This document shows positions 28,751 to 62,096 of a stretch of DNA of 64,000 bases, piece after piece. The position numbers and the translations under genes are program-made. The first letter of the stretch is position 1, and each line of letters starts with the position of its first letter. The DNA lies in the IMG/VR virus record IMGVR_UViG_3300027708_000012, positions 186,001 to 250,000 of that record. One strand, 5' to 3'. The notes beneath the pieces were generated by a model. That model saw nothing but the letters and a program-made list of their open reading frames with translations, did not search any database and was not told the origin of the DNA.

Positions 28751-28755
28751 AATGA

Positions 28756-28773: not shown

Positions 28774-28794
28774 ATCCACAAGGAGGAACATATT

Positions 28795-29085
28795 ATGTTC
28801 AAAAAAATCAAAGAGTTTTTCGTAGGAAAACCAAAAGAAGTTGCTGTTGAAGCACCTTATAAAACTGAATCTGCCAATGAATCAGTTTTAACAGTTGTGC
28901 CAGCAGGTACTGAGGCTTCTGTTGCTGCTCCAACGCAAGTTGCTCCAGTTACTCTAGCTGTAGAAGGTGCCGGTGCAGTCGAAGCTCCAGCTGAAAAGCC
29001 AGTTAAAGCCAAAAAGACACCAGCAGCTAAAAAAGCACCTGCGGCTAAGAAGCCACGTGCGCCTAAAAAGCCTAAAGCAGAGTAA
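28795..29085 (+). CDS. Small protein with Lys/Ala/Pro-rich (histone H1-like) tail
   Basis: AKKTPAAKKAPAAKKPRAPKKPKAE; AGGAGG RBS. Confidence 0.75.
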   Translation: MFKKIKEFFVGKPKEVAVEAPYKTESANESVLTVVPAGTEASVAAPTQVAPVTLAVEGAGAVEAPAEKPVKAKKTPAAKKAPAAKKPRAPKKPKAE

Positions 29086-29316
29086 TTAAAACTTAGATAA
29101 TTGGCTAGAATAGTTAGCCATATCTTCTTGAATCCTAACCCTTCGTTTTTCGTCGAGGTTAGGATTTTCTTCTAGCTCTTCCCTAAGAGTTTCCAACCTG
29201 TGTATTAGTTGTTCTCGAGATAGCTTTTGGCTTGATTGTACAGTTCCATGCTGGCGAGATTTTTTCCCTTGCTCTCGCACATTATGTCGAACTGGTTTAG
29301 AAAAGTTATTGCCCAT
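29086..29316 (-). CDS. Possible small coiled-coil protein overlapping the uvsE 3' end
   Basis: Fills an otherwise empty 120-bp gap but overlaps uvsE by 112 nt; start uncertain. Confidence 0.35.
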   Translation of the reverse strand: MGNNFSKPVRHNVREQGKKSRQHGTVQSSQKLSREQLIHRLETLREELEENPNLDEKRRVRIQEDMANYSSQLSKF

Positions 29317-30233
29317 TCGTTAGTTTTGTGATTCCAATAAAAGTCACTGTGTGCCCTTAGTTTTTGTTTCTTGTAGCCATCTACAAGTAACTGTGCGTGA
29401 TCAGGTGCTAGATTAGTGTCATGATTGACGAGATAATCTTCACGAGATACAGAATAATGAAGTGTAGGGCGGAGACCACGCCAACTATCCACGACACGCT
29501 TAACACGATCGTCTGTCGAAGAGATATACTCCCCTTCGCGAATCCAATGATGGTGAATATCGAGCACAATAGGAACGATATCGCTAATATCAAGACAGTC
29601 ATTTAGTCCCCATGCGTTTTCTTCGTTTTCAATTGTAATGCAATTTCTTGCTTCTGGACTGAGCCGGGCATATGCTCTGCGTATGCCTTCAGGGCCTTGC
29701 TTGCCTGAAATGTGGACATTAATTTTAAAGTCTTGGAACGATTTTCCAAAACCCATATAGCGGGCCATATCTGTGTGATATTCAAATTCATCTATGCTTC
29801 GTCCGACAATGCCTTCGTTAATGCTAGCCAGAACAACAAACTGACCAGGATGCATACTAAGACGGGTATTGCTTGCACGAGCACTATCACCAATAAGGAT
29901 AAAATTGCGTTCAAGATATTGAACCACATCGGGTCGTTGCCAAAAATAACTCCATGTTGGCTCGGTATAAGCAGGAAGAATGTCGCTACTAAGACGAACC
30001 ATCCTAAGATTTTCATTAAGTTCTCCTACACGGTCTACAAGTTTTTTTGTAGCCGCCAGATTCTGGACCATTAGATCCCAGAGCTTTTGCTCTGCAACGT
30101 CCTTCGACTGTCTATTTAACCAACTTATGGTAGTTGTACCGGTGTTGTATTGTTTAGCATCGTCGGTTGCTTTAATACCGTTGACTTGTTCAGGAGTGTC
30201 GATCCATTTACATGCAAAGCCTATACGTTTCAT
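29205..30233 (-). CDS. uvsE: UV damage endonuclease (UvsE/UVDE)
   Basis: RIGFACK, RLSSDILP, RLSMHPGQF, INVHISG, TIENEE, LDIHHHW; start moved to MKRIGF. Confidence 0.92.
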   Translation of the reverse strand: MKRIGFACKWIDTPEQVNGIKATDDAKQYNTGTTTISWLNRQSKDVAEQKLWDLMVQNLAATKKLVDRVGELNENLRMVRLSSDILPAYTEPTWSYFWQRPDVVQYLERNFILIGDSARASNTRLSMHPGQFVVLASINEGIVGRSIDEFEYHTDMARYMGFGKSFQDFKINVHISGKQGPEGIRRAYARLSPEARNCITIENEENAWGLNDCLDISDIVPIVLDIHHHWIREGEYISSTDDRVKRVVDSWRGLRPTLHYSVSREDYLVNHDTNLAPDHAQLLVDGYKKQKLRAHSDFYWNHKTNEWAITFLNQFDIMCESKGKNLASMELYNQAKSYLENN

Positions 30234-30403
30234 TACCAATGCCTTATGACGCCTGAGATTATAAAAATGTTTGTAAGTATGTATGATAACACAATTACAG
30301 TACGAATGCAAGCAATTCGATCCGCTTCTGCGTCCGAACTGCCTGCTTTTTCACCTAATGCTTTGGCCCAACTACGCCAAAAATTATGAAAGAAGATCCT
30401 CAT
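30233..30403 (-). CDS. Small membrane protein, 56 aa (not in ORF track)
   Basis: MRIFFHNFWRSWAKALGEKAGSSDAEADRIACIRTVIV...; TAATG coupling to uvsE. Confidence 0.7.
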   Translation of the reverse strand: MRIFFHNFWRSWAKALGEKAGSSDAEADRIACIRTVIVLSYILTNIFIISGVIRHW

Positions 30404-30890
30404 TCCACTCACGATGCCCTTCTCTAAAAGCCATATTAGCCTGTGTCTCGCGAACTTCTACACGATAGCACCACAAACGTGCTGCCTCGCCCGGGCCCCA
30501 CATCTCTGGAATATAAACTCCATTGACATACTTGTAGAGCATATCACTAAGGCCTTCACAGCCTAAACGTGGTAGTACTACTACTTTTGCCATTTTCTTT
30601 TCTTGTAGCAACTTGTATGTTTCCATTTCTGGATCATCTTCTGCTACAATAAGAGTGTGATCAAATTGATCTTCTAAAATCTTTTTGAGTTCTTTCAGCC
30701 CACCATAATCAGCCGCCCAATTACGAACGTCTAAATCATTGGTACCAAAATAGAACTTCATTGAAAAACTGTAGCCATGAATTAGGTTACAGTGACTATC
30801 GCTTCGCCATTGTCTGTAAGCACACGGAAATGCGTCCACATATTCTTTTGTGCTTTGATACTTGTATACTACCGGTTGTAGTGTTGCCAT
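30384..30890 (-). CDS. queD: 6-carboxy-tetrahydropterin synthase / PTPS (QueD family)
   Basis: CAYRQW, HCNLIHGYS, DYGGLK, FDHTLI, EVRET motifs. Confidence 0.88.
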   Translation of the reverse strand: MATLQPVVYKYQSTKEYVDAFPCAYRQWRSDSHCNLIHGYSFSMKFYFGTNDLDVRNWAADYGGLKELKKILEDQFDHTLIVAEDDPEMETYKLLQEKKMAKVVVLPRLGCEGLSDMLYKYVNGVYIPEMWGPGEAARLWCYRVEVRETQANMAFREGHREWNEDLLS

Positions 30891-33732: not shown

Positions 33733-33761
33733 ATTATATACTCAAACAAAACAAATGTCAA
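33733..33761 (-). promoter_or_regulatory. Consensus sigma70 promoter
   Basis: TTGACA, 17 nt, TATAAT. Confidence 0.85.
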
Positions 33762-33766
33762 CCTTT

Positions 33767-34633
33767 TCAAAATAATATTTCCCTTGCCTCACTGGACGAT
33801 GCTACGTTACCACCCAATAGCTTTATAATATCTGCAGCCATTTTAACTAATTCGGCGTTAGTCTTTGCCAAAACACCTTTACTAGTATAGATATTATCTT
33901 CCATACCAACACGTACATGCCCGCCTAATATCATAGTTTGGGCTACCATTGGCATTTCTTGTTTACCTATACCAAATGCGCTCCATACACTTCCTTTTGG
34001 TAGTTCATTGTAAGCATACATCAGTGCATTAGGAGTTGCATTCCATCCATATTTGATACCCATAGCAAATTGCCAAAATGGAGTTCCTTTGATTGTTCCG
34101 TCTGCCACAAATTCCTGTGCTATACGAAAATCTCCGCTATCAAAAATTTCTAATTCACACTTTGTTCCTGCCTGCTGTACAAGATCTACCATCCTCCTAG
34201 TTATTAACTTATGATTAATACGTATACCATTTTCGGCTTGATGCATAGTATTAAAATCTATGCTGCACAAGTCAGGTTTAATTAATTCAATATGCTTAAC
34301 TCTGTCAATAGCATGAAGCAATACCGTCCCCGGTGCTCCGTGTGATAAGTTATCTTTGCTTGGAATATACAATGCTCCAGGACCTGTTGTTAAATTAATC
34401 AACACATTGGTATTATGTTTTTTAATTCTATCAACAGTATCTCGGTATAAATCTACATCCATACTAGGCCGAGTTGTTTCTGGATTACGTACATGGATAT
34501 GTACAATGGCTGCTCCCGCTTCTGCAGCCTCTAATGCACTTATAGCAATCTCTTCAGGTGTTACTGGCAGATAGGGAGTTTGTTCTCTATTAGTAACAGC
34601 ACCGGTGATGGCACAAGTGATAATAGTTTTCAT
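33767..34633 (-). CDS. Beta-keto acid cleavage enzyme (BKACE/Kce, DUF849 family)
   Basis: IITCAITGA, LPVTPEEIA, AGAAIVHIHVR, ELEIFD, GGHVRVGMEDN; start moved to 34633. Confidence 0.92.
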   Translation of the reverse strand: MKTIITCAITGAVTNREQTPYLPVTPEEIAISALEAAEAGAAIVHIHVRNPETTRPSMDVDLYRDTVDRIKKHNTNVLINLTTGPGALYIPSKDNLSHGAPGTVLLHAIDRVKHIELIKPDLCSIDFNTMHQAENGIRINHKLITRRMVDLVQQAGTKCELEIFDSGDFRIAQEFVADGTIKGTPFWQFAMGIKYGWNATPNALMYAYNELPKGSVWSAFGIGKQEMPMVAQTMILGGHVRVGMEDNIYTSKGVLAKTNAELVKMAADIIKLLGGNVASSSEAREILF

Positions 34634-35379
34634 ACAGTTCTTCCACCGTCCACTAAAAATATACTGCCTGTGGCAAATCGTATGTGTGTACAACACGCTT
34701 CAATAGTACTAGCAATATCATCTGCATACCCAATACGCTTTAACGGACTGGATTCTGCCATCTTTTCGTTAACACCTGGACCTTTAACAGCACCACTAGT
34801 TGGCTCTACCATAAAACCGGGAGACACCGCTACAATACGAATTTCAGGAGCAAGTGCTTTTGCCAAAGTTTTAGTCAGTTGATTGATTCCAGCTTTGCTA
34901 CAACCGTATGCTATATTGCTATTACTTGCACCTTCAGCACTGGTACTGGAAATATTAACTATTAATCCATCTTTGGTTTCTTTAAGCATAGGAGCAAATG
35001 CACGTATTGTAGCAAATACTCCACGCAGGTTAGTTGTTACAATACTATCAAATATTTCATCTGTGAGCGCATCCAAATTTGAAGGCAACACATTTTTTGT
35101 AATGCTTGCACTGTTAACTAAAATATCACAACGACCAAACTGTTTTTTGATCATTGCAGCCGCCAATGTCAAATCAGCTGAATTGGTAATATCTGCTAAA
35201 ATTGCTGTGCCAGATAGTGCTTGCATTTTTTGCATGGCACTATCTATATCTTTTCGAACCAGTGCTACTACTGTGGCTCCTTGCTGTGACAATCGTTGGG
35301 CGGTAGCATAACCCACTTGTCCGCATCCGCCTGTTATGACAGCAACTTGACCTTGGAGATTATTCAATCGTTGGAACAT
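34630..35379 (-). CDS. Short-chain dehydrogenase/reductase
   Basis: ITGGCGQVG, LVNSA, NISS, YGCSK. Confidence 0.92.
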   Translation of the reverse strand: MFQRLNNLQGQVAVITGGCGQVGYATAQRLSQQGATVVALVRKDIDSAMQKMQALSGTAILADITNSADLTLAAAMIKKQFGRCDILVNSASITKNVLPSNLDALTDEIFDSIVTTNLRGVFATIRAFAPMLKETKDGLIVNISSTSAEGASNSNIAYGCSKAGINQLTKTLAKALAPEIRIVAVSPGFMVEPTSGAVKGPGVNEKMAESSPLKRIGYADDIASTIEACCTHIRFATGSIFLVDGGRTV

Positions 35380-35409
35380 ATTACAAGTCCGTTAAATTAA
35401 TATTTTTAT

Positions 35410-36741
35410 TCACAATGTATATATCCGCGCTTGTTCGATCAGTTTATTTTTATCAATCTTATTAACGCCAGTAAGAGGCATAGAATCTAAAATCCAAATT
35501 TTACGCGGACATTCATTGTAAGACAATGTTTTCAAAATATGTGTTTTGATTTCATCTTCTGTTGTATTATTTTTAATAGTTACAAATGCATAAGGTTTAA
35601 CACCTTTTATATCGTCCTCTAAAGGAATAACCGCCGACTCTACTATACAAGGGTGTGTTTCTAATATAGTTTCAATCTTCCTAGGATATATGTTATTGCC
35701 ACCGCTGACAAACATATCATCGGCACGTCCCACAAAATAATAAAAACCTGCGGCATCTGTTTCAAATATATCATTAGTGATAAAATATCCATCTTTTGTA
35801 AATCTAGTGTCCCCATTACTATAACTAGTCATCATAGACGGACTTTTGATTTCTAATATTCCATTGTCTAGTCTATAATCTATTCCTGTAGCCGGATACC
35901 CTACACTCATTTCAGGAGTGGGTAACCACGGATGTTTACTAAACAACCCAGGACCTGCTTCTGTACTACCATATGCTATTGATATGGATATACTAGGAAA
36001 TTTTTGTTTAATAAAACTATATAAAGTTTTGCTAACTGGAGCACTAGCCATGGCAATATGTCTAATGGTCGTAAGTTTAGAAACGTCTTCTTGTAATAAC
36101 AAAGCAATCATAGTAGGAACTGAAGTTATAAAATTGACCTTGTGTTGTTTAATAACTTCTACAGCAGATTTAGCTTCAAATTGACTCATTAGTATTATTG
36201 TAGCATTGCCAGCTAGTCCTACTTCTAGATTAGATAACCCATTCATGTGATAGCAAGGAGCTGCTATTAGCATACGTTTTTTAGGCATTAATGGATCCTT
36301 AGCTTTTTGACTTATAGTCCATAGACGTTTATGAGGTATTACTACGCCCTTTGGCATTTTTGTAGAGCCAGATGTGTAAAGTATAATAGCAGGAGAATTT
36401 TCATCCATGCTAATTTTATCTGGGGTACCTATTTTAAAAAAATTAAAAAAGTTGTCTTCTGTTAGTACGAGTTCACATTGACTATCTTTTATAATGTACT
36501 CACGAACTGTTTGAGGTAGTTTAGTGCTGATTAAAACTGCAGTTGCACCTGCCCGTAGTATACCTAAATAGGCCGCCACAAAATTAATAGAATTATTTGC
36601 TAGTATTCCAACACGTTTATACCCAGAAAGTCCTACAGTAAAGCCGTTGGCTAAGTTGTCGAGCTCAGTATAGCTATACTCTCTATCGGTTATTATTGCT
36701 GTTTTTTCTGACGGTTTAAAAAGATAACCTAAATTATACAT
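35410..36741 (-). CDS. Acyl-CoA synthetase / AMP-binding ligase
   Basis: LYTSGSTKMPKG, AYGSTE, FITND, GRADDMFVSGGNNIYP, GVNKIDK. Confidence 0.92.
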   Translation of the reverse strand: MYNLGYLFKPSEKTAIITDREYSYTELDNLANGFTVGLSGYKRVGILANNSINFVAAYLGILRAGATAVLISTKLPQTVREYIIKDSQCELVLTEDNFFNFFKIGTPDKISMDENSPAIILYTSGSTKMPKGVVIPHKRLWTISQKAKDPLMPKKRMLIAAPCYHMNGLSNLEVGLAGNATIILMSQFEAKSAVEVIKQHKVNFITSVPTMIALLLQEDVSKLTTIRHIAMASAPVSKTLYSFIKQKFPSISISIAYGSTEAGPGLFSKHPWLPTPEMSVGYPATGIDYRLDNGILEIKSPSMMTSYSNGDTRFTKDGYFITNDIFETDAAGFYYFVGRADDMFVSGGNNIYPRKIETILETHPCIVESAVIPLEDDIKGVKPYAFVTIKNNTTEDEIKTHILKTLSYNECPRKIWILDSMPLTGVNKIDKNKLIEQARIYTL

Positions 36742-36760
36742 TCAATGATCCTGTTTAAGT

Positions 36761-36789
36761 ATGTTATATATTCAAATAAGAAAAGTCAA
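36761..36789 (-). promoter_or_regulatory. Sigma70-type promoter of the ligase-SDR-BKACE operon
   Basis: TTGACT, 17 nt, TAACAT. Confidence 0.55.
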
Positions 36790-36839
36790 TAATTTTTTTA
36801 AGAAATATGCAACCCTATAAATATGTCACAAGGAAAATT

Positions 36840-37883
36840 ATGGACTTTACACCTGGAAAACCAATTAGAACTTATGCAGAAAATGGTGCATGGCGTGATT
36901 GGAGTACTGATGAATTGGTTGGGGACAAGCTAAACTTCTTACCAAATTGGAAATGTGGCGCAGGCGTTGACAGTCTATATGTTGATATGGATGGATACGT
37001 TTGGACAGCCAGTTGTCGTGTAGGCGGCAAATTAGGAAATGTATTTGAAGACTTTCGTGTGCCCGATGATTGGATTGATTGCAAACGTAATGTTTGTAGT
37101 TGCGGCGCCGACCTCTTTATTCCAAAAGTTAATAAAATTGAATTTAAACCATTACTTCGTAGAGGTGCTGGGTTAGAAACTGAAATTGAGCTACGTGATG
37201 ATACCCTAACTGATTTTGTTGCTATGGAAAGAACTCATGCAAGTAATCAAAAACAAGTTTATTGGGAAATAGGTCGTCGTTGCAATTATGATTGTAGTTA
37301 TTGCTGGCCGTGGATACACAATAATACCGATCCGCACAAATCGCTAGAAGAACTAATGAAAGCTACAGCACTGATAGAAGAGAAATTCACCAAAGGTGAA
37401 GCAGCTAACTTTATCATTAGCGGCGGCGAGCCAACGGTTAATAAAGATTTCTTAGACTGGTTGCGTTATCTAAACGCCATGGGACATCATGTTAGTTTGC
37501 ATAGTAACGGAAGTCGTTTACCGGACTACTACAGAGAAATCATACACTATGGTGATTTAAATTTAAGTGTACATTTTGAATTTTATGATCGTGCAAAGTT
37601 CGTTCGTGTAGTAGAAGCTATTGCAGACGAAAAAGCCAATAACGGTGGGTTAGGTCATCTGGAAATAAAATTCATGATGGCACCACATAATAGAGAAGAA
37701 ACATTAAGTTTAGAAGAAGAACTCAAAACTCTTCCGAATTTTATAGACTTTTGTACTTGGGCAGTAGTACCTATCCGTGGCGGCTTAGATAATAAAAATA
37801 GTAAGCCAAATTCAACTAGCGGAAGCGAAGTTATGGAGGGTTACACAAAGGAAGACTATATTTTGTTTGGAGACAGAAAGTGA
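36840..37883 (+). CDS. Radical SAM protein with N-terminal SPASM/twitch-like Cys domain
   Basis: CNYDCSYC, ISGGEPT, HSNGSR; N-terminal WKCGAG...C...C...CSC; start moved to MDFTP after TATAAATA (36816-36823) and the RBS. Confidence 0.85.
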   Translation: MDFTPGKPIRTYAENGAWRDWSTDELVGDKLNFLPNWKCGAGVDSLYVDMDGYVWTASCRVGGKLGNVFEDFRVPDDWIDCKRNVCSCGADLFIPKVNKIEFKPLLRRGAGLETEIELRDDTLTDFVAMERTHASNQKQVYWEIGRRCNYDCSYCWPWIHNNTDPHKSLEELMKATALIEEKFTKGEAANFIISGGEPTVNKDFLDWLRYLNAMGHHVSLHSNGSRLPDYYREIIHYGDLNLSVHFEFYDRAKFVRVVEAIADEKANNGGLGHLEIKFMMAPHNREETLSLEEELKTLPNFIDFCTWAVVPIRGGLDNKNSKPNSTSGSEVMEGYTKEDYILFGDRK

Positions 37884-38788
37884 ATCACATTGTAACAGTT
37901 ACTTGTGACAGAGACTTTGACATGATGTTGATGCAAGCACAGAGTATTGATAAATTTTTATTAGATAGATCCACACACTGGGTTGTAATACAAACTTCTA
38001 GTAAACCAATACAAGAATGGGTCGATGCATTAAGTCCGTATTATACCGGGCCTTGCCAGTTGCGGTTTTTTGATACACGCTCTTATAAGAAGACACTGAG
38101 TGAAAATCTACTAACACCCGGGCATAAAAATTGGATTGATCAGCAGATGTTAAAATTATTAATTGTTGATCGCATTGATAGTGATTCCTACTTGGTATTG
38201 GATACTAAAAATTTCTTCATCAAGCCAACTAGGTTATCTGAATCTCCTCAACATGAGGGGAATGCTTTTATAGATGAGAGACAGAAACAATATCGATACT
38301 GGCCCGATTGGATAGAATTATTAGAAAATATAACTGGTAAAAAACCAACACATTTTTGGGAACCAACAACTCCCTTTCGAATGAAAACATCAATCGTAAA
38401 AGAAATACTAAACAATCATCCTAAGCTAGAATTACTTTTTGATTATGTTCACAATGGACTTACAATTCCAGCAGGAATAAGTGAATTTATATTGTATAGA
38501 TTTTATAGTAATTTTGATTTTAATACATCTGTTAAATCTTTTTCATTTACTTTTTGGGGAAATTATACAATAGAAATGTTTAGATCGTGCCTTACTGACA
38601 ATAACATTAAAATCATAGGATTTCATAGATTTTTTATACGAGATCAATCTGATGACTGTATTTCTGAAATTCAAAAATCTTTAATAGAAATAGGATTTGA
38701 CAATAATATTGTTAACAGAGTATTTGATAAAAAGTATTGGGCAATAAATGTAAACAATCACAGTAAATTAAACCAGCCTCAGCATTAA
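37880..38788 (+). CDS. Glycosyltransferase-like protein (DUF6492-like)
   Basis: QQMLKL, YLVLDTKNFF, SEFILY pattern. Confidence 0.5.
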   Translation: MNHIVTVTCDRDFDMMLMQAQSIDKFLLDRSTHWVVIQTSSKPIQEWVDALSPYYTGPCQLRFFDTRSYKKTLSENLLTPGHKNWIDQQMLKLLIVDRIDSDSYLVLDTKNFFIKPTRLSESPQHEGNAFIDERQKQYRYWPDWIELLENITGKKPTHFWEPTTPFRMKTSIVKEILNNHPKLELLFDYVHNGLTIPAGISEFILYRFYSNFDFNTSVKSFSFTFWGNYTIEMFRSCLTDNNIKIIGFHRFFIRDQSDDCISEIQKSLIEIGFDNNIVNRVFDKKYWAINVNNHSKLNQPQH

Positions 38789-39399
38789 ATTTTTTCTAAC
38801 ATTACATCACAATACATTTCGTTTTGTAATGCCATACCAGTTATCTTCCAACCCTCTTTTACACACAACCAATTTACTACTTCTACGGTCCCGTAATCTT
38901 CTTTATTTCTATGATCGTACATCATATAATCGTTATAAATTAGTTTTCCTCCGGGCGATAGCTTTGCTTGGGCAGCTTTGGTATCTTTCCAAATACCTTT
39001 TAATGAATGATCCCCGTCTATATAGATCAAATCATAAGTGCCTTTGTATTTGTGTAAATTAGTAGAACTATCTCCTTCAAATATCTGCAAATCTACGGTG
39101 TCACCAAATTTATTTTTTAGTCGATTGTAATAAAAATCACTGTGTGTTGACCCATTAAATTTTTCAATGGCAGGTATTCCATTAAATGAAACATTTGCAT
39201 TATGTAGTTTAAATATATCATATGCTCCGAATATTTTAGGTGTCAATGTTTCTATCATATATTCGGAAAAATCACCATAAGCAACACCTAACTCGGCAAT
39301 AGATTTTATGCCAGATCCTACTAGGTTATCAATAAGGTTACGCCTGTGAGCAAAAAGTTTAGCATCTTTCAAATGTTCTGGTTGTAATGGTAAGGGCAT
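38785..39399 (-). CDS. Class I SAM-dependent methyltransferase (Methyltransf_24-like)
   Basis: ELGVAYGDFS, DLIYIDGDHS, LSPGGKLIYNDY. Confidence 0.85.
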   Translation of the reverse strand: MPLPLQPEHLKDAKLFAHRRNLIDNLVGSGIKSIAELGVAYGDFSEYMIETLTPKIFGAYDIFKLHNANVSFNGIPAIEKFNGSTHSDFYYNRLKNKFGDTVDLQIFEGDSSTNLHKYKGTYDLIYIDGDHSLKGIWKDTKAAQAKLSPGGKLIYNDYMMYDHRNKEDYGTVEVVNWLCVKEGWKITGMALQNEMYCDVMLEKI

Positions 39400-39401
39400 G
39401 A

Positions 39402-40112
39402 TTATCTAATATAAGTGTCATCTTTTAATGATTGTATAAAACTTTTAAGCTCTACAGCGTTAGCTACTTTATCCCATAGCTGTTCAGTTTTTCTCTTTTT
39501 TAGTTGATCATTTATTTTCCCGCGATATATTGGACGTTGTATGTATTCAAATAGTTCTGCTACTATATTTTCATAGTGTATAGTAGTGTAAGTTATATCT
39601 AGCGATTTCAACCAATTATCAAAATTCTTATTTTGTTCGTATAACCAAGCCATTTCTTCAAAGTGATGTATTTCTAAATCATCGGGTAAGTCAGATGCTG
39701 TAAATTCGTGCCACACACCTGTGGATAATGCTAGTCCGTAACTTAGTATTTGAGCTTCTATATCTTGTCTTTTTAACACTACAAATTCTATATTACATTT
39801 TTCTATTCTTTTAATAATTTCTTTATGATTAGGGATATTACTGTAAGGAAAAAATCTTACCACAAGTGATTGATTTTTGTCACCATTCTCTAATGCTAAT
39901 AGCACATTTTCAACACGTTCTTCTATAGAAATTGAGCTAGTATCATCGTAATAGTTAAGAGTGTTATCATCGTTTATTTTTACTCTAGTTTCTAAATTAT
40001 GAGTAAATGGCTCGTATAGGTTTGCCATGTTACGAGTTGAACTTTCAAGCAGTGTGGCCAGTAATTGACTACCACTACGCGGTAACCCTAAAATGCAAAA
40101 TCTCTTTTTCAT
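39402..40112 (-). CDS. Sulfotransferase-like protein (Stf0/P-loop type)
   Basis: ILGLPRSGSQLL 5'-PSB loop, LYEPF, LKRQDIEAQILS, IHYE. Confidence 0.7.
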   Translation of the reverse strand: MKKRFCILGLPRSGSQLLATLLESSTRNMANLYEPFTHNLETRVKINDDNTLNYYDDTSSISIEERVENVLLALENGDKNQSLVVRFFPYSNIPNHKEIIKRIEKCNIEFVVLKRQDIEAQILSYGLALSTGVWHEFTASDLPDDLEIHHFEEMAWLYEQNKNFDNWLKSLDITYTTIHYENIVAELFEYIQRPIYRGKINDQLKKRKTEQLWDKVANAVELKSFIQSLKDDTYIR

Positions 40113-41059
40113 TACTTTTCCTTAGTACTCATAATATCAAAATTACAATGACACATATTTTTGCTACACACTATTGGCTCAGTTGGGAGAGTTAAATCTA
40201 CGTCGTTTATTTTACCAACAGCACCACCCTCTTTACACCATCCTCGATAAATTGAACCATCCATATCAACAATCAATTGCTCAATACCAGCATAGCATTT
40301 CCAGCCAGACCAGTCATTGATTTTTTCGCTAATGAACCTATGCGCACTTGATACTTGGCTAGTACCGTCAGGATATACTACACGCATAGCACCTCTGTAA
40401 TAATCAAATGTCTTGGTAAATTTAATATGTTTACTGATTAATTCGTGTTGCTTATCAAATATTCTCTTTTGAAAATCATTATAATCATAGAGTGTATCAC
40501 CAAAGTCGTGGATCAATGGCTGCAAGGCCATACTAATATTGCCTAAATTTTTAATTTTATTTGCTACAGCATAACAATGATCAAACTTTTCAGGACTCAT
40601 CATTATGTTAACGTGAGTGCGTACATCGTTGTTTAATAATTTAACTACGTCAATAAAGTGTTTATCGTCAGCATGCTCTGGATGAAAGCTAAGACATACA
40701 TGATCAAAGTATTGTTTATTTTCTTCCCAGTATCTTAGTGTGCGTGATCCATTACTGATTAAACCAACTTTGACACCCATCTCAGAACAAAATTGACAAA
40801 TTTCAATAAAATGTTTATACATTGTGACTTCACCACCAGTGAATTCAAAATATATTTTTTTATGAAAATATTGATCTTTTACACGAGCAATGAAATTTTT
40901 AATTACGCTAGGATCAGGCCAATACTTTGATCCATCGTGCAGTGCTGAAGGACAATACGAGCAACTATAGTTACAGGTATTGCCCAAGCACCAATTGACT
41001 ACAAACCAATCTTCGTGCGAATTGTTTGAATGTTCTAACCGTATATATTTGTGTTCCAT
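40112..41059 (-). CDS. Radical SAM protein with C-terminal SPASM/twitch-like domain
   Basis: CNYSCSYC, FTGGEVT, ISNGSR; C-terminal WKCYAG...C...C...CHC. Confidence 0.88.
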   Translation of the reverse strand: MEHKYIRLEHSNNSHEDWFVVNWCLGNTCNYSCSYCPSALHDGSKYWPDPSVIKNFIARVKDQYFHKKIYFEFTGGEVTMYKHFIEICQFCSEMGVKVGLISNGSRTLRYWEENKQYFDHVCLSFHPEHADDKHFIDVVKLLNNDVRTHVNIMMSPEKFDHCYAVANKIKNLGNISMALQPLIHDFGDTLYDYNDFQKRIFDKQHELISKHIKFTKTFDYYRGAMRVVYPDGTSQVSSAHRFISEKINDWSGWKCYAGIEQLIVDMDGSIYRGWCKEGGAVGKINDVDLTLPTEPIVCSKNMCHCNFDIMSTKEK

Positions 41060-41086
41060 GGAAAACCTTATAATATACTAGTTATC

Positions 41087-56962: not shown

Positions 56963-57907
56963 TTATTTTGATTGAATCTTAGCTACTAAGCCAGCAGTAA
57001 AATAGTTCTCAAATTTCTCGTAAACTACTTTAGTTGCTTCTGCAAAGCGAACTTGCTCTTCTGTGCTCATACGAACAACTTCAATACCGTCAGCTTCTGC
57101 ACGAGCTTGTACAAGTGCGATGTCGTCGATACTTAGGCTACGCTCATAACGTGCGGCTTCTTTAGCGGCTTCGCTAACAACTGCCTGTAGTTCTGAACTT
57201 AGTGTGTTCCAGAAGTCAGTACCAATCAAAATGCTTGTTAAGAACAAGCTGTGTTCTGTGTGGTTGATAACTTTAGATACTTTGTCGTGTCCTAGTGCAT
57301 AAACACGAGGATATGTGCTTTCGCCAACTGTTACATTAGCTGAAGCCAAGTTCTCTGATAGTTCTTCCAATTCCATTGGAACTACATCAGCACCAAGGGT
57401 TTTGAATGTTTCGATAGCAACTGGGCTGAAACTTGTGCGCAACTTCATACCACGTAGGTCTTCAATCTTAGCTACTGCTTCATTACCAGGAATGATACGG
57501 AAACCGCCTGAGTATGTGAAAGCTAAACCTTTAACTTTCTTAGACTCTTGCAAGCTATCTAACAAACTAGCGCCGACTTCACCTTCGAATACGCGACTTG
57601 CGTGATCGTGGTCTTTAAACAAGAACGGTAGATCCAAAGCATAAAAGTCTTTGTTGATCTTACCTAGTGTAATTGTGTAAGTTTGACTCATTTCGATTGC
57701 GCCAGAATCTAGCAAATCTACTAAGCTGTGCTTGTCAACTACAACACCGTTATTGTACTTTTCAGCGTATTCGCTCATAGTCATAACTTCGATTTCAAGT
57801 TGTTCAGGTGCTCGTGCATTTACTTCTTGAGCAAATACTTTGGCGGCGCGAATAAACAACTCAATTGGCTCGTGTGCGAGTACCCATTTTATGTGTTTTT
57901 TGTTCAT
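56963..57907 (-). CDS. dctP: TRAP-type solute-binding protein (DctP family) without signal peptide
   Basis: ALDLPFLF, KIEDLRGMKLRT, FKTLGADVVPM, HTEHSL; N-terminus MNKKHIKWVLAHEP has no hydrophobic core. Confidence 0.85.
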   Translation of the reverse strand: MNKKHIKWVLAHEPIELFIRAAKVFAQEVNARAPEQLEIEVMTMSEYAEKYNNGVVVDKHSLVDLLDSGAIEMSQTYTITLGKINKDFYALDLPFLFKDHDHASRVFEGEVGASLLDSLQESKKVKGLAFTYSGGFRIIPGNEAVAKIEDLRGMKLRTSFSPVAIETFKTLGADVVPMELEELSENLASANVTVGESTYPRVYALGHDKVSKVINHTEHSLFLTSILIGTDFWNTLSSELQAVVSEAAKEAARYERSLSIDDIALVQARAEADGIEVVRMSTEEQVRFAEATKVVYEKFENYFTAGLVAKIQSK

Positions 57908-58202: not shown

Positions 58203-59450
58203 TTAATGTGGCCAGTCTATTTTATAGTTAACTATGTGATGTTTAAAGTATTCGTATACACCTGGATCGTCAACGCTTATCTTTTTATAGTCATTGATCA
58301 TACCTAAATTTGTAAGACCTTCTGGGGTTTTCTTACCGTTAATTGTTAAATTCCCTAAAGATTCAAGTTTAGTTTTGAAATAAAAATACCAATTGTTCTT
58401 ATCATAGTTACATATGTAATTCCTAGCTGTGTACTTATATGTTGCAATGGTATTGTGTATTTTTTCTCCGTTGTTATTATTGACCATACTCCATAACTGA
58501 TAATCGATTCCGTTAAACCAATTAATAGTAGAATCTATGCATTGTCGTACAGACACCACTGTATTAAAATATAATGCACCCCTCACCGAACAATTTAAAT
58601 ATTTTACATTAAAAATCAACCACCAAAAGAAATCGTGCAAGCTATGCACAGGAACCGATGATGTGTTTATATTATGCACATATTTTTGATATAATAATCT
58701 ACCGTGCTCCAGACCTTCGGGCGTTGTATTGTATGCAAAATGCCTAATAAGAAGATCTTTATAAGCACTGTAATGCACATCACCGGACGATATTTTATAT
58801 TTTAAAGGCCGTAAGTTTGCTTGTACTTCAGGACTAAGATGTCTAGTATATTCGTCATAGTTATTGTACATCTCTAATCCGATACTAGTTCCCATAATAC
58901 AATCGCCTTCGTCTGAAGTAATTGGCATGTAGCCCATGTTGATTATATCGTCGTACCAATAGTTCAATGAATCGAGTATTTTAAATTTACCGTGGATATA
59001 ATTTTCCCATATGTACGGGTTTTCAATTACGGCGTGCATACTCGAAGAAATAATCACCGATTTTAATTCTTCTTGATTTAAATTTTTAAGAAGAGAAACA
59101 AGAACAAGTGTGCTATCTATGCCGCCTGAATATAATAATGCAAATTTTTTCCCTTGTTGAATTAAGGCTTTAATTTCCAAAGCGCGACTATCTGTTACTT
59201 CCTCAAACGATTTATTAAAATTTGGATCGTAAGCAGGCATTGCAAAATCTGGAATGATTTCTTGCTTCCACGGAAGGCTCCACTCCCCTTCGTTGCGTGT
59301 AACAAATCGACTTAATGAAAATCTTTTTGCAATATCTAAATAAAATTTACCGCCGGGCCCAGATTCTTCTCTGATGCTGTTCCAAAAATCCCAAGGTGCA
59401 TATCTGTCACCTCGAATATTATGGAAATAAAGTGTGTCGTCTAAGTTCAT
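58203..59450 (-). CDS. PP-loop (asparagine-synthetase-like) ATP pyrophosphatase 1
   Basis: ALLYSGGIDSTLVL; ITSDEGDCIMG; no N-terminal Cys glutaminase domain. Confidence 0.7.
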   Translation of the reverse strand: MNLDDTLYFHNIRGDRYAPWDFWNSIREESGPGGKFYLDIAKRFSLSRFVTRNEGEWSLPWKQEIIPDFAMPAYDPNFNKSFEEVTDSRALEIKALIQQGKKFALLYSGGIDSTLVLVSLLKNLNQEELKSVIISSSMHAVIENPYIWENYIHGKFKILDSLNYWYDDIINMGYMPITSDEGDCIMGTSIGLEMYNNYDEYTRHLSPEVQANLRPLKYKISSGDVHYSAYKDLLIRHFAYNTTPEGLEHGRLLYQKYVHNINTSSVPVHSLHDFFWWLIFNVKYLNCSVRGALYFNTVVSVRQCIDSTINWFNGIDYQLWSMVNNNNGEKIHNTIATYKYTARNYICNYDKNNWYFYFKTKLESLGNLTINGKKTPEGLTNLGMINDYKKISVDDPGVYEYFKHHIVNYKIDWPH

Positions 59451-60202
59451 CGTTTTTTAATTAAAGGTATTAATATTTTTGCGGAGCTGTCAAACTCCCA
59501 CCATTTTTCTCCAAAGTCTGCATTTCCAGCATTGTGATGATGATTGTTATGCCAACCTTGCCCCCATACAAATAGACCAGTAAACCAATTATTAACTGAA
59601 TTGTCATCTGTGTTATGATTTCGGTATCCCGCTGATGGAATATGGCCTACTACATTGACTAAATTATCTTGATGATGACTTAACAAAATTGCTGGAATTA
59701 AAACCCCTAGAGTAAATTGCCAAGAAACAATTGCAGAAATTAAAATGGTACTCCAAAATATTTTATTATGATTTTCATGTAGGTAAACAAGATAGGGGTC
59801 TTTCATAATATCTCTTGCTGACATTAAATTTACCTTTGCCGGATTAATTTTACGTTGCCATGTTATAAATGCACTTAGTTTTCCGTGTATGGGACTGTGC
59901 ATATCTTGCTCTTTGTCTGCATACCTATGATGTATTCCTCGATGTAAAGCTACCCAGAACGGTAAACTTCCATCGGCACTCATCATACCTAAGTAAGCTA
60001 ACACTTTAGCAATAATAGGATATGTCTCAAAACTTTTATGAGCAAAGTATCTATGGTATCCAACAGCAACACCAAACCCGCCAATTAATGTCCACATGAA
60101 TAAAATGCCAATCAGATTCCACCAAGTATAGTTTATAAAAAACAACGAGGCTAGAAAAATAACGTGTAAGGGATAACTTACTTTATATAAATGTTTATTC
60201 AT
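59447..60202 (-). CDS. Membrane fatty-acid desaturase (delta-9-like)
   Basis: His boxes HRYFAH, HRGIHH, HNNHH; DNSVN, GQGWHNNHH. Confidence 0.92.
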   Translation of the reverse strand: MNKHLYKVSYPLHVIFLASLFFINYTWWNLIGILFMWTLIGGFGVAVGYHRYFAHKSFETYPIIAKVLAYLGMMSADGSLPFWVALHRGIHHRYADKEQDMHSPIHGKLSAFITWQRKINPAKVNLMSARDIMKDPYLVYLHENHNKIFWSTILISAIVSWQFTLGVLIPAILLSHHQDNLVNVVGHIPSAGYRNHNTDDNSVNNWFTGLFVWGQGWHNNHHHNAGNADFGEKWWEFDSSAKILIPLIKKR

Positions 60203-61298: not shown

Positions 61299-62009
61299 TT
61301 ATAAAATAGTCCCGCGTTTAAAACTATGAGTTTCGCCCATTAATTCGTAGTAATAATCTGCGACCCACCATGTTGTTTCATATTGCTGTTCCCACATTTT
61401 ATTAATTTTAAATTTAGCTTCTTTTAAAGTTTGACTAAAATATAGAATTTTTTTAATTTCTTGTATAATTCCGTTAGGATAAAATGAACGATCTGTATAA
61501 GAGCTAAGACCGTCCACCCATTCTTTAGGAAAAAATTCCTGAGAAATTGTGTAAGTATCGTAAAAATTTACGGTAATACTACATAATTTCCCGGCATACA
61601 TTGCTTTATGCACATAGTCGGCATACTCTTTAAGTGATGACAGCATACTGTTACTACTTTGTGCTTTAAAATCTTCCGGAGTTCCTTGGTAACTAATTTG
61701 AAGAGGATTGTCTATAATTTTTAATATAGGAGTTTGCCCATGTATTAAATCAGAAATTGTTCCTCTCTTTTGACGAGTCTTGTCAAATATCATAAACTCT
61801 AGGCAATTCGTATTATCCATTTTTCCGATATTATTAGGTAATACATATACCACCGATGCTATTTTTGATGATAACACTTTAGCAGTTTCGAGTGTTACCC
61901 AAAAGTCTTCATTATCGACAATTAACCAACGATCGAAGGAATGACAATAAATTCCGTTCTTTCTTCGATTGGAATCTTTGTCGTAGTAGTATTGCAAAGA
62001 CTGACTCAT
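61299..62009 (-). CDS. Hypothetical protein
   Basis: Likely start MSQSLQYYY. Confidence 0.7.
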   Translation of the reverse strand: MSQSLQYYYDKDSNRRKNGIYCHSFDRWLIVDNEDFWVTLETAKVLSSKIASVVYVLPNNIGKMDNTNCLEFMIFDKTRQKRGTISDLIHGQTPILKIIDNPLQISYQGTPEDFKAQSSNSMLSSLKEYADYVHKAMYAGKLCSITVNFYDTYTISQEFFPKEWVDGLSSYTDRSFYPNGIIQEIKKILYFSQTLKEAKFKINKMWEQQYETTWWVADYYYELMGETHSFKRGTIL

Positions 62010-62096
62010 TTTTAGTATCCTGTGTTGGTGGCAAATATTTAGCACCATACGGTTGCGGCTGATAAATATTGTATATTATTAATAAGGATATTAAAT

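What the first reader, a model, noticed from the sequence alone, without database searches (positions are those of the whole stretch)
33733..36789. Phage-encoded acyl-CoA ligase + SDR + beta-keto acid cleavage enzyme operon
Seen: three co-oriented genes behind one sigma70-type promoter, with an ATGA overlap between SDR and BKACE and intact catalytic motifs. Established: BKACE/Kce enzymes condense a beta-keto acid with acetyl-CoA to give an acyl-CoA plus acetoacetate; SDRs interconvert beta-hydroxy and beta-keto acids; AMP ligases make acyl-CoAs. Inference: a self-contained CoA-thioester module that makes or consumes a specific acyl unit. It may feed the neighbouring radical SAM/transferase genes or tap host 3-hydroxyacid pools. 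BKACE is not a commonly cited phage auxiliary gene.
Basis: partly seen in the sequence, partly recalled or inferred. Interest (0 to 1): 0.72.

Follow-up and report, generated by a model that had tools for sequence, protein, structure and literature searches.

The report
Phage ligase–SDR–BKACE accessory gene cassette
A freshwater T4-like jumbo phage carries a removable three-gene metabolic cassette (acid–CoA ligase, reductase, beta-keto-acid cleavage-type enzyme) whose last two genes came from bacterial aromatic-degradation operons and were then altered; it is the first such enzyme noted in phages, and its chemistry is still unproven.

Summary
Three intact, co-oriented minus-strand genes are present: an ANL ligase (35410-36741), a classical SDR (34630-35379) and a BKACE/DUF849 enzyme (33767-34633), with an ATGA overlap between the last two. 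They lie in a 345-kb T4-like virus record, so this is not a host chimera.

New findings:
- The trio is a discrete 3,041-bp cassette (33763-36803) bounded by two copies of a promoter-bearing repeat. It sits in a hypervariable island between conserved phage genes.
- A near-identical strain in the same lake sample, and an independent viral contig, lack exactly this cassette.
- SDR–BKACE is a conserved pair from Burkholderiales intradiol-dioxygenase operons. Phage copies form one clade. The ligase has no counterpart there.
- All phage BKACEs lost an Arg that every cellular homologue keeps, and the next active-site loop is remodelled.
- The closest characterised relative is BsfD (flavophos synthesis), which does not do the canonical cleavage. 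Like BsfD, the phage enzyme has Phe where canonical BKACEs have Tyr.
- The radical-SAM neighbours are not conserved partners. A signal-peptide-less DctP-like protein and a PP-loop ATPase are.

Function is inferred only. I favour acyl-CoA formation, acyl transfer onto a beta-keto acid, then reduction. Catabolic cleavage is a close rival.

The parts
33763..36803 (-). The accessory cassette as a unit: its own promoter copy, ligase, SDR and BKACE. It is present or absent as a block.
   Evidence: DNA run X1 holds a contig joining 33762 to 36804 (3,041 nt skipped, 25-nt filler, depth 8.4 against 20.9 for the cassette form). IMG/VR contig L109 (neighbouring genes 94-100% identical) has the same junction and the same 25 nt. 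78 further relatives of the backbone lack the cassette at this site.
36761..36789 (-). Promoter-like site upstream of the ligase (TTGACT-17-TAACAT). It forms the upstream copy of the repeat that bounds the cassette.
   Evidence: 9/12 match. It aligns with the g405 promoter of the window and of the cassette-less L109 (A4).
35410..36741 (-). ANL-superfamily adenylate-forming ligase (acyl/aryl-CoA ligase type), 443 aa, with a short N-terminal domain.
   Evidence: Pfam AMP-binding plus AMP-binding_C. Best solved relatives are MenE, 4-coumarate and 4-chlorobenzoate CoA ligases, E 5e-41 to 1e-33. All NCBIfam hits are far below their cut-offs. It is the only AMP-binding gene in the genome.
34630..35379 (-). 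Classical short-chain dehydrogenase/reductase (FabG-like ketoreductase type), 249 aa.
   Evidence: Pfam adh_short and adh_short_C2. Gly motif and Ser-Tyr-Lys are present. It is 44-54% identical to the SDR that sits directly upstream of BKACE in 66 of 80 bacterial loci.
33767..34633 (-). BKACE/DUF849 Zn TIM-barrel enzyme of the RaKce/BsfD-like branch, 288 aa. Its start overlaps the SDR stop (ATGA).
   Evidence: PF05853 E 2e-92. Best sequence hits are PDB 9ZSC (BsfD, E 1e-75) and 3C6C. The AF2 model has pLDDT 92 and TM 0.95 to 3C6C. H45/H47/E245, E160/E162 and F164 are invariant; position 88 is never Arg in phage copies.
33733..33761 (-). Perfect sigma70 consensus promoter (TTGACA-17-TATAAT) for the conserved gene g405. 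It forms the downstream copy of the bounding repeat.
   Evidence: 12/12 match. It is one of 29 such sites genome-wide. Alignment A4.
56963..57907 (-). DctP-family (TRAP solute-binding fold) protein without a signal peptide. It travels with BKACE in relatives.
   Evidence: PF03480 E 7e-51. It lies next to BKACE in L003, L004, L005, L009-13, L021, L023 and L104. All phage copies start at the mature domain, whereas bacterial ones have signal peptides. The carboxylate-binding Arg context GMKLRT is kept.
58203..59450 (-). PP-loop ATP pyrophosphatase-like protein (AsnB-synthetase-like, no glutaminase domain). It travels with the cassette in relatives.
   Evidence: Invariant SGGxDS in 60 homologues. 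AF2 pLDDT 94; only weak fold hits, all to the PP-loop superfamily. It lies directly after BKACE and a 251-aa gene in L003, L004, L019, L103 and L105, and in three tandem copies in L009-13.
61299..62048 (-). 249-aa protein of unknown function. In relatives it is the gene immediately downstream of BKACE.
   Evidence: Homologues follow BKACE in L003, L004, L019 and L103 (blastp; L103 sequence in alignment A3). By gene size and position a 251-aa gene also follows BKACE in L105. No Pfam or Atlas assignment.
59447..60202 (-). FA_desaturase-family membrane di-iron protein. It is found near BKACE in several relatives.
   Evidence: PF00487 E 2e-11. Homologues occur in L003, L005, L020, L023 and L104.

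Best explanation
What it is (shown). It is an accessory, promoter-bounded three-gene cassette in a hypervariable island of a freshwater T4-like jumbo phage. It was assembled from two sources. The SDR-BKACE pair was captured once from a Burkholderiales ring-cleavage operon (intradiol dioxygenase-SDR-BKACE-MDR-cupin). The ANL ligase has a different, unknown origin. After capture the BKACE pocket was remodelled. An Arg kept by every bacterial homologue is lost. That residue corresponds to the anion-binding Arg91 of BsfD. New basic residues appear in the next active-site loop. So the phage enzyme no longer handles the ancestral substrate.

How it most likely works (inferred).
1. The ligase uses ATP to turn a free carboxylic acid into an acyl-CoA.
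2. The BKACE homologue, through the Zn-bound enolate of a beta-keto acid (acetoacetate is the family's universal partner), takes over that acyl group. This is the Claisen step shared by the reverse canonical BKACE reaction and by BsfD.
3. The 2-acyl intermediate is then resolved in one of two ways. CoA may resolve it to a C2-extended beta-keto acid plus acetyl-CoA. Alternatively it decarboxylates to a beta-diketone, as in BsfD.
4. The SDR reduces the new keto group.

The net result is ACP-independent extension of an acid to a beta-hydroxy (or hydroxy-keto) product. The co-travelling cytoplasmic DctP-like binder and PP-loop adenylating enzyme may then take this product further.
For: Cassette nature:
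- The joint in run X1 and the identical junction in L109.
- Absence from 78 backbone relatives.
- Flanking promoter repeat.
- A strain diverged by 1-3%, from another study, keeps the cassette at the same place (X5 records 20 and 21).

Origin:
- 80 bacterial loci are 51-62% identical, nearly all Burkholderiales.
- The SDR lies directly upstream in 66 of 80.
- Of the 79 cellular loci, an intradiol dioxygenase is present in 59, an MDR gene in 58 and a cupin gene in 57.
- Phage BKACEs form one clade, SH-aLRT 97.
- No ligase lies within +/-7 kb in any bacterial locus, and the best match in three donor-type genomes is only about 31% identical.

Pocket change:
- Position 88 is Arg in 79/79 bacterial copies and in 0/42 phage copies.
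- Phage-specific H131, R138, H141 and K/R142 appear in the beta4-alpha4 loop.

Direction and chemistry:
- The nearest characterised enzyme is the biosynthetic BsfD. It shares Phe164, the beta3-loop insertion, the Zn ligands and the CoA contacts K224/Y249/K252.
- BKACE reactions run in reverse in vitro (PMC11961710).
- The ligase is of the MenE/4CL/FadD type, not the acetyl- or acetoacetyl-CoA synthetase type.
- The ligase diverges faster than BKACE (30-54% against 61-84% identity).
- Phage SDRs carry V-R-[RK] after beta2, which by the general SDR rule points to NADP(H).
- The partners that stay with the module through rearrangements are biosynthetic-looking and intracellular: a PP-loop ATPase, and a DctP-like protein without a signal peptide. 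In some relatives there are also GNAT, ATP-grasp and carbamoyltransferase genes.
- The phage encodes no thiolase or CoA-transferase to finish a catabolic route.

Expression hint: lake metatranscriptome contigs are 100% identical to parts of the ligase and BKACE, and one spans the SDR/BKACE junction (34563-34809).
Against: - No enzyme was assayed, and the substrate and direction are unknown.
- Every physiologically characterised SDR-BKACE or dehydrogenase-BKACE pair works in the cleavage direction (deoxyribonate pathway, PMC6365646), and so did the ancestors of this pair.
- The Tyr-to-Phe change is not proven to cause BsfD's chemistry. The F166Y protein was insoluble, and all 79 catabolic-context bacterial homologues also have Phe.
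- The SDR cofactor call is weak, because the bacterial partners carry mixed motifs.
- The cassette-less strain keeps the DctP-like gene at 100% identity. The second cluster therefore does not depend on the cassette being nearby, and part of the co-travelling may simply reflect shared ancestry of related phages.
- The RNA contigs could be DNA carry-over (warning).
Confidence: 0.45

Rival explanations
1. Catabolic salvage module. The SDR oxidises a host or imported beta-hydroxy acid to the beta-keto acid. BKACE then transfers it with acetyl-CoA to give a shortened acyl-CoA plus acetoacetate. The ligase re-activates acetoacetate, which inhibits BKACE, to acetoacetyl-CoA. Host thiolase would return two acetyl-CoA. 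The phage would thereby tap a carbon and energy pool during infection.
For: - This is the canonical BKACE reaction, and the known logic of SDR+BKACE in deoxyribonate catabolism.
- The pair descends from catabolic ring-cleavage operons.
- Two papers stress that acetoacetate must be activated by a CoA ligase or transferase and that it inhibits BKACE (IC50 1.45 mM). This gives a reason for adding a ligase.
- Cellular acetyl-CoA levels favour the cleavage direction (general knowledge).
Against: - The ligase resembles aryl and long-chain acid ligases, not acetoacetyl-CoA synthetases. It is also the least conserved of the three genes.
- The phage has no thiolase or CoA-transferase.
- The DctP-like partner has no signal peptide, so it cannot serve uptake.
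- The partners that co-travel are adenylating or amide-forming enzymes, which are not catabolic.
- The SDR motif is NADP-like.
Confidence: 0.33
2. BsfD-type chemistry only. The phage enzyme C-acylates a beta-keto acid and the product decarboxylates to a free beta-diketone, which the SDR reduces to a hydroxy-ketone. That product would be a diffusible small molecule, such as a signal, an inhibitor or a metal chelator, made by the phage.
For: - The best sequence hit is BsfD, about 45% identical, with the same Phe, the same beta3-loop insertion, and the same Zn and CoA residues.
- The insertion and Phe are invariant across the phage clade.
Against: - Arg91 of BsfD is absent (Leu88).
- There are no phosphonate genes (no PEP mutase).
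- Phe is also universal in homologues from catabolic contexts.
- The cause of BsfD's divergent chemistry is unresolved.
Confidence: 0.12
3. The three genes are not one pathway. The SDR-BKACE pair is a drifting remnant of a captured operon, and the ligase is an unrelated passenger in the same moron.
For: - The cassette is dispensable in a near-identical strain.
- Some lineages keep BKACE without the ligase or SDR (L009-13, L005).
Against: - All three genes are intact, with catalytic residues invariant across more than 40 phage sequences that differ by up to about 48%.
- Ligase, SDR and BKACE are adjacent in eight of the ten distinct lineages sampled first, despite changed flanks. Two contigs fetched later (L103, L105) show the same adjacency.
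- The genes are gained and lost together.
Confidence: 0.1

Closest known systems
BsfD, the DUF849 enzyme of flavophos (2,4-dioxopentylphosphonate) biosynthesis in Burkholderia (PDB 9ZSC/9ZSH/9ZSV/9ZSN; bioRxiv 10.64898/2026.01.15.699783)
   Same: - Best PDB sequence hit (E 1e-75, about 45% identity by my count of the alignment).
- Same Zn ligands: H48/H50/E247 in BsfD, H45/H47/E245 here.
- Same CoA contacts: R226/Y251/K254 in BsfD, K224/Y249/K252 here.
- Same Phe at the position where canonical BKACEs have Tyr.
- Same roughly 20-residue insertion after beta3.
   Different: - The phosphonate-stabilising Arg91 is Leu here, and never Arg in any phage copy.
- There is no PEP mutase or phosphonate context.
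- The partners here are a ligase and an SDR rather than PsfABC-type enzymes.
- The reaction of the phage enzyme is untested.
SDR-BKACE pairs in Burkholderiales intradiol-dioxygenase operons (Polaromonas, Limnohabitans, Polynucleobacter, Paraburkholderia, Cupriavidus; uncharacterised, presumed maleylacetate/3-oxoadipate route)
   Same: - Closest natural relatives: BKACE 51-62% and SDR 44-54% identical.
- Same SDR-then-BKACE order and tight spacing.
- Same Phe164.
- The phage clade branches among them.
   Different: - The bacterial operons carry dioxygenase, MDR reductase, cupin and TctC genes, and no ligase.
- All 79 keep Arg at position 88, and they differ at about 20 further clade-specific positions.
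- Their GC is 0.42-0.72, against 0.37 for the cassette.
Canonical BKACEs: Kce of lysine fermentation (2Y7F), P. denitrificans BKACE15 (8RIP), and the dehydrocarnitine, 3-oxoadipate and ketodeoxyribonate cleavage enzymes
   Same: - Same Pfam family, TIM-barrel fold (TM 0.86-0.88) and Zn site.
- Same acetyl-CoA/acetoacetate chemistry class.
- An SDR upstream of BKACE also occurs in the deoxyribonate pathway.
   Different: - Only about 30% identical.
- The Tyr (Tyr145/Tyr173) is Phe here.
- The phage enzyme scores well below the cut-offs of all four NCBIfam BKACE models it matches: 240/382, 200/430, 170/725 and 163/350 bits.
RaKce (Reut_C6226, PDB 3C6C), a structural-genomics DUF849 protein of unknown reaction
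   Same: - Best structural match to the model (TM 0.95, rmsd 1.7 A).
- Phe at the Tyr position.
- A hydrophobic residue, not Arg, at the BsfD-Arg91 position (alignment).
   Different: - 40% identity only.
- Its function is unknown, so it transfers no annotation.
Morons and promoter-flanked mobile cassettes in the hyperplastic regions of T4-type phages (my recollection of the PeSL literature; not checked here)
   Same: - It lies in a variable island between conserved genes and brings its own early-type promoter.
- It is bounded by repeated promoter sequence.
- It is present or absent between near-identical strains.
   Different: - It carries a three-enzyme metabolic unit rather than one small ORF.
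- No stem-loop element was identified.

Membership tests
BKACE / DUF849 (PF05853) | Profile match above the curated cut-off over the whole domain | tested here: met
   309.9 bits against a cut-off of 24.8, profile positions 1-272 of 274. It is the single copy in the genome.
BKACE / DUF849 (PF05853) | (beta/alpha)8 barrel like solved family members | tested here: met
   AF2 model pLDDT 92. TM 0.95 to 3C6C, 0.86 to 2Y7D and 0.88 to 8RIP.
BKACE / DUF849 (PF05853) | His-His-Glu zinc site | tested here: met
   H45, H47 and E245 align with BsfD H48, H50 and E247. They are invariant in 121 sequences.
Canonical (cleaving) BKACE | Active-site Tyr (Tyr145 in CcaKce, Tyr173 in PdKce) | tested here: not met
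   Phe164, invariant in 42 phage and 79 bacterial relatives. BsfD and RaKce have the same substitution.
Canonical (cleaving) BKACE | Membership of a curated isofunctional model (Kce, 3-oxoadipate, 3,5-dioxohexanoate) | tested here: not met
   239.5/382, 163/350 and 200/430 bits.
Canonical (cleaving) BKACE | Beta-keto acid + acetyl-CoA gives acyl-CoA + acetoacetate | not testable with these tools
   This needs an enzyme assay.
BsfD-type acyl-transfer/decarboxylation enzyme | Phe at the Tyr position, plus the insertion after beta3 | tested here: met
   Ungapped alignment through the loop, and F164 = F166.
BsfD-type acyl-transfer/decarboxylation enzyme | Arg91 for the phosphonate, and a phosphonate gene context | tested here: not met
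   Leu88 here; none of 42 phage copies has Arg. There is no PEP mutase in the genome.
Classical SDR | Rossmann Gly motif and Ser-Tyr-Lys catalytic residues | tested here: met
   adh_short E 2e-39. TGGCGQVG, and SST...YGCSK.
Classical SDR | Cofactor and substrate | tested here: inconclusive
   V-R-[RK] after beta2 suggests NADP(H), but the bacterial partners carry mixed motifs. No NCBIfam model reaches its cut-off.
ANL adenylate-forming ligase (acyl-CoA synthetase type) | Both domains, plus the core motifs including the catalytic C-terminal Lys | tested here: met
   AMP-binding plus AMP-binding_C. The motifs are seen in the alignment to MenE.
ANL adenylate-forming ligase (acyl-CoA synthetase type) | A specific equivalog (MenE, FadD and others), and CoA as the acceptor | tested here: not met
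   The best model scores 241 bits against a cut-off of 476; MenE scores 212 against 330. The acceptor (CoA, carrier protein or amine) cannot be told from sequence.
Phage auxiliary gene cassette (moron) | Inside a bona fide phage genome, between conserved phage genes, and not host DNA | tested here: met
   gp23-type capsid gene and terminase, 94% complete. The backbone DNA ligase-g285-[island]-g405-g490-PTPS-UvdE-SOD is conserved in 80 viral contigs. GC is phage-like.
Phage auxiliary gene cassette (moron) | Presence/absence polymorphism with defined ends and its own promoter | tested here: met
Single operon | One transcript covering the three genes | tested here: inconclusive
   The genes are co-oriented, with a 30-nt gap and a 4-nt overlap and no terminator. 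An RNA-library contig spans the SDR/BKACE junction, but only as short contigs, and DNA carry-over is not excluded.

The most novel reading that the evidence does not exclude
Uncultured freshwater jumbo phages carry a phage-specific small-molecule biosynthetic pathway. It would be built around a repurposed BKACE that forms C-C bonds (acyl-CoA plus a beta-keto acid) rather than cleaving them. The product would be a beta-diketone or beta-hydroxy acid. The co-travelling PP-loop adenylating enzyme, cytoplasmic DctP-like binder and membrane di-iron oxygenase would then tailor it. That would make it a phage-made metabolite (a signal, an inhibitor or a modification precursor), not an energy-salvage gene set.
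Probability: 0.15. Interest if true: 0.85.

Novelty: new variant of a known kind. Interest (0 to 1): 0.6.

Why it matters
- BKACE/DUF849 enzymes have not been reported in phages. Here they define a large, coherent, phage-specific clade: more than 100 sequence clusters at 69% identity or above, many on 100-370-kb contigs from lakes.
- The case shows step by step how a phage builds a new metabolic unit. It captured a two-gene core from a host-type catabolic operon. It added a ligase from elsewhere and rewired the active site. It now moves the result as a promoter-bounded cassette.
- Natural strains with and without the cassette coexist in one lake sample. This is a ready-made comparison for its fitness effect.
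- The nearest characterised enzyme does non-canonical C-C bond chemistry. The phage clade is therefore a promising place to look for further new DUF849 reactions.

Tried and rejected
- Deposited phage genomes (INPHARED): no DNA or protein match to the trio or to BKACE. All comparison therefore rests on metagenomic contigs.
- 7-deazaguanine DNA modification, suggested by the nearby PTPS/QueD-like gene, the radical-SAM genes and a QueC-like hint for the PP-loop protein: no TGT/DpdA in the genome. Dropped.
- Phosphonate pathway as in flavophos: no PEP mutase. Dropped.
- A complete catabolic route encoded by the phage: no thiolase and no CoA-transferase.
- Link to the phage ACP: the only PP-binding gene is about 100 kb away, next to a PF10118 protein and a subtilase. 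No link was seen.
- Uptake role for the DctP-like protein: rejected, because all phage copies lack a signal peptide.
- The 249-aa partner gene: Pfam, the Atlas and 9 homologues gave no assignment.
- Equating C. pinatubonensis locus L086 with RaKce, as an early notebook entry does: withdrawn. The phage enzyme is 55% identical to L086 but only 40% to 3C6C.
- 'Neutral or hydrophobic substrate' inferred from the loss of Arg88: softened, because the phage clade gains R138, H131, H141 and K142 in the adjacent loop.
- The Bellinzoni 2011 Kce paper was not available. Model coordinates are not exposed, so residue-to-zinc distances could not be measured.
- One repeat finder failed on strand syntax; DNA alignment was used instead.
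- Complex prediction was not used, because no protein-protein binding claim is made.

Full report

Yes. The minus strand carries three consecutive ORFs.

| ORF | Length | Pfam result |
|---|---|---|
| 35410-36741 | 443 aa | AMP-binding E 3e-52, AMP-binding_C E 8e-13 |
| 34630-35379 | 249 aa | adh_short_C2 E 3e-46 |
| 33767-34633 | 288 aa | BKACE PF05853, E 2e-92 |

- The SDR stop and the BKACE start share ATGA at 34633-34630.
- Catalytic motifs of all three proteins are intact.
On its own it is not above chance.
- It is, however, a diverged copy of the perfect promoter at 33761-33733.
- The genome has 29 near-consensus sigma70 promoters against 1.4 expected, mostly intergenic.

**2. Is it phage DNA?**

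- The window is bases 186001-250000 of a single 345,369-bp IMG/VR virus record.
- That record has a T4 gp23-type capsid gene and a terminase, and is 94% complete by CheckV.
- The flanks hold baseplate and tail-fibre-like genes and a DNA ligase.
- The same 17-kb stretch occurs at 100% identity in two other IMG/VR contigs. It also occurs in at least ten freshwater metagenome samples from several studies.
- A strain 1-3% diverged, from an independent study, has contigs running from g405 into BKACE and SDR, and from SDR through the ligase into the radical-SAM gene.
- Cassette GC is 0.366 and window GC is 0.375. Bacterial homologues are at 0.42-0.72.
- Chimerism with host DNA is therefore excluded.

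**3. The trio is a discrete, dispensable cassette.**

- In a DNA run from the source lake, one contig (depth 8.4, against 20.9 for the cassette form) joins 33762 to 36804. It skips 3,041 nt and has 25 other letters in between.
- An independent 45-kb IMG/VR contig (L109) has the radical-SAM gene directly next to g405, with exactly those 25 letters. Its surrounding genes are 94-100% identical to the window's.
- g405 is a core gene with 228 IMG/VR relatives.
- The backbone is DNA ligase-g121-g285-[variable island]-g405-g490-PTPS-UvdE-SOD. It is conserved in 80 contigs. Only the window's own copies carry ligase-SDR-BKACE in the island.
- The cassette is bounded by two copies of about 50 nt that contain the promoter. 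This suits gain or loss by recombination between promoter copies.
- The cassette-less contig keeps the DctP-like gene at 100% identity and has no BKACE in its 45 kb.

**4. Where the genes came from.**

- A scan of one genome per prokaryotic species found 304 relatives of BKACE. The best 80 are 51-62% identical and nearly all are Burkholderiales: Polaromonas, Limnohabitans, Polynucleobacter, Hydrogenophaga, Paraburkholderia and Cupriavidus.
- In 66 of the 80 loci, a homologue of the phage SDR (44-54% identical) sits directly upstream of BKACE.
- One of the 80 (L023) looks like a mis-binned phage contig (section 7). Among the other 79, most show the operon intradiol dioxygenase-SDR-BKACE-MDR reductase-cupin(-TctC), which is an aromatic ring-cleavage context.
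- On a maximum-likelihood tree rooted on alphaproteobacterial sequences, the 42 phage-type BKACEs form one clade (SH-aLRT 97) among the Burkholderiales sequences.
- The ligase is different. None of the 80 loci has a homologue within 7 kb.
- The best match in three whole genomes of the donor type is only about 31% identical over part of its length.
- So the cassette is a chimera: a captured SDR-BKACE pair plus a ligase of unknown origin.

**5. What changed in the phage enzymes.**

*The nearest characterised enzyme.*
- The best solved-structure sequence hit is 9ZSC (E 1e-75). The literature search identified it as BsfD of flavophos biosynthesis.
- BsfD C-acetylates 3-oxo-4-phosphonobutanoate, and the product then decarboxylates to a beta-diketone. 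The retro-Claisen cleavage of canonical BKACEs does not occur.
- BsfD and RaKce have Phe where canonical enzymes have Tyr. BsfD also has an extra loop after beta3, carrying Arg91 near the phosphonate.

*What the phage enzyme keeps.*
- It keeps the Zn ligands, the CoA contacts, the loop and the Phe (F164, invariant).

*What it has lost or gained.*
- The Arg91-equivalent is Leu88.
- Across 121 sequences this position is Arg in 79/79 bacterial homologues. It is never Arg in the 42 phage-type sequences, which have L, Y, F, Q, T, V, S or H.
- About twenty further positions separate the two groups. These include a one-residue insertion and new H131, R138, H141 and K/R142 in the beta4-alpha4 loop on the catalytic face.
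- The AF2 model (pLDDT 92) superposes best on RaKce (TM 0.95).
- The phage SDRs carry V-R-[RK] after beta2, where many bacterial partners have D-R-S. By the general SDR rule this suggests NADP(H), but the evidence is soft.

**6. Conserved partners are not the neighbours.**

- In relatives the cassette lies in different places. The radical-SAM, DUF6492, methyltransferase and sulfotransferase-like genes next to it in the window are not conserved partners.
- The genes that recur near BKACE across at least five gene orders are homologues of window genes about 20-28 kb away:
  - a DctP-family protein (56963-57907);
  - DUF2061 (57934-58194);
  - a 415-aa protein (58203-59450);
  - an FA_desaturase-family protein (59447-60202);
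  - a 249-aa protein (61299-62048).
- The DctP-like proteins of all phage contigs lack a signal peptide, while bacterial ones have one. They keep the Arg context that binds carboxylates in TRAP binding proteins. They are therefore cytoplasmic carboxylate binders rather than uptake components.
- The 415-aa protein has an invariant SGGxDS PP-loop and a confident model (pLDDT 94). Its only fold and profile matches are weak, and all are to PP-loop enzymes such as AsnB, carbapenam synthetase, NAD synthetase and LarE.
- Some relatives add GNAT, ATP-grasp and carbamoyltransferase genes.
- Caveat: these phages are related to each other, so part of this linkage is inherited rather than selected.

**7. 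How it most likely works.**

*Shown.* The gene content, ancestry, cassette behaviour and active-site differences are shown.

*Inferred.* The chemistry is inferred. I favour a biosynthetic reading, at about 0.45:
1. ligase: acid to acyl-CoA;
2. BKACE homologue: transfer of the acyl group onto the Zn-enolate of a beta-keto acid, which is the first half-reaction common to BsfD and to the reverse canonical reaction, shown in vitro to be reversible;
3. resolution to a C2-extended beta-keto acid plus acetyl-CoA, or decarboxylation to a diketone;
4. SDR: reduction.

*Arguments for this reading.* These are the ligase type and its faster divergence, the nearest characterised relative, the NADP-like SDR motif and the intracellular, adenylating partners. 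The phage also lacks thiolase and CoA-transferase genes.

*The close rival (about 0.33).* This is the canonical catabolic order: the SDR oxidises a beta-hydroxy acid, BKACE cleaves it with acetyl-CoA, and the ligase re-activates the inhibitory acetoacetate. Precedent and the ancestry of the pair support it.

*Weaker alternatives.* A purely BsfD-like diketone route is about 0.12. A non-pathway reading is about 0.10.

*Expression.* Two lake metatranscriptome runs hold 100%-identical short contigs inside the ligase and BKACE, and one crosses the SDR/BKACE junction. DNA carry-over cannot be excluded.

**8. Novelty.**

- No BKACE is present in 50,697 deposited phage genomes or in PHROGs.
- No paper found links BKACE/DUF849 with phages.
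- Yet the large protein collection holds more than 100 clusters at 69% identity or above, many on contigs of 100-370 kb, along with a parallel family of the ligase.
- This is a new, phage-specific variant of a known enzyme family. It is packaged in a known kind of element, a promoter-bounded accessory cassette of T4-type phages.
- MAG records labelled Bdellovibrio (L023) and Candidatus Parcubacteria (P0096, P0162) carry the phage gene set and are probably mis-binned phage contigs.

Noticed in passing
window 56963-57907 (and L003, L004, L005, L021, L023, L104): The phage DctP-family (TRAP solute-binding) proteins have no signal peptide and start at the mature domain, whereas bacterial homologues have classic signal peptides. 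This is a cytoplasmic 'binding protein' in a phage. It stays 100% identical in the strain that lacks the cassette.
   Followed up: partly
window 58203-59450; L009-L013 about 10100-14400: This is a large, mostly viral family of about 400-aa PP-loop (SGGxDS) proteins, with 928 representatives at E<=1e-3. They lack a glutaminase domain and have no Pfam model. Three tandem paralogues lie beside BKACE in one phage lineage.
   Followed up: partly
window 36807-42674: The hypervariable island between conserved genes g285 and g405 holds two radical-SAM genes, DUF6492, a Methyltransf_24 methyltransferase and a sulfotransferase-like gene (39402-40112). Its content differs in almost every related contig.
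   Followed up: partly
window 15506-27535: A single 4,009-aa ORF sits next to baseplate and tail-fibre-like genes. Only its last ~130 residues match a PHROG, and that PHROG has no known function.
   Followed up: no
window 28190-30890: The conserved backbone encodes an Fe/Mn superoxide dismutase, a UvdE UV-damage endonuclease and a PTPS/QueD-like protein. The genome has no TGT/DpdA, so the PTPS is not part of a recognisable 7-deazaguanine DNA pathway.
   Followed up: partly
window 56509-56871, 62432-63295, 59447-60202: Other auxiliary genes lie close to the second cluster: an AdoMet decarboxylase, a 287-aa Rieske protein and an FA_desaturase-family protein. The last has two further paralogues in the genome (near genome positions 253.4 kb and 284.4 kb).
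   Followed up: no
whole genome (G000), e.g. window 33733-33761, 47790, 56492: There are 29 near-perfect TTGAC[AT]-N16-18-TATAAT promoters against 1.4 in shuffles. 24 are intergenic. They are clustered at the left end of the genome and in the second half, so this phage clearly relies on host sigma70 for many genes.
   Followed up: partly
L023 (record titled Bdellovibrio MAG); P0096/P0162 (record titled Candidatus Parcubacteria MAG): The L023 contig, binned as a bacterium, carries the phage-type BKACE, ligase, SDR, DctP-like and PP-loop genes and falls inside the phage clade. The Parcubacteria-labelled proteins are a phage-type BKACE and ligase on a 17-kb contig. Both are probably mis-binned phage DNA.
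   Followed up: partly
genome 322.5-325.1 kb (L018): A phage-encoded acyl carrier protein (79 aa) lies beside a PF10118 'metal-dependent hydrolase' family protein and a subtilase fragment, about 100 kb from the cassette.
   Followed up: partly
L019 6085-7264, L020 6699-7268, L105 7078-8255: In some relatives, one or two paralogous ~190-200-aa ORFs of unknown function sit between the ligase and the SDR. The window genome has no homologue of them.
   Followed up: partly
L109 6930-6945 against window 36804-36812: In the cassette-less strain, the position of the radical-SAM gene's ATG reads ATA (CAT to TAT on the shown strand). That gene may use another start there, or may be impaired.
   Followed up: no
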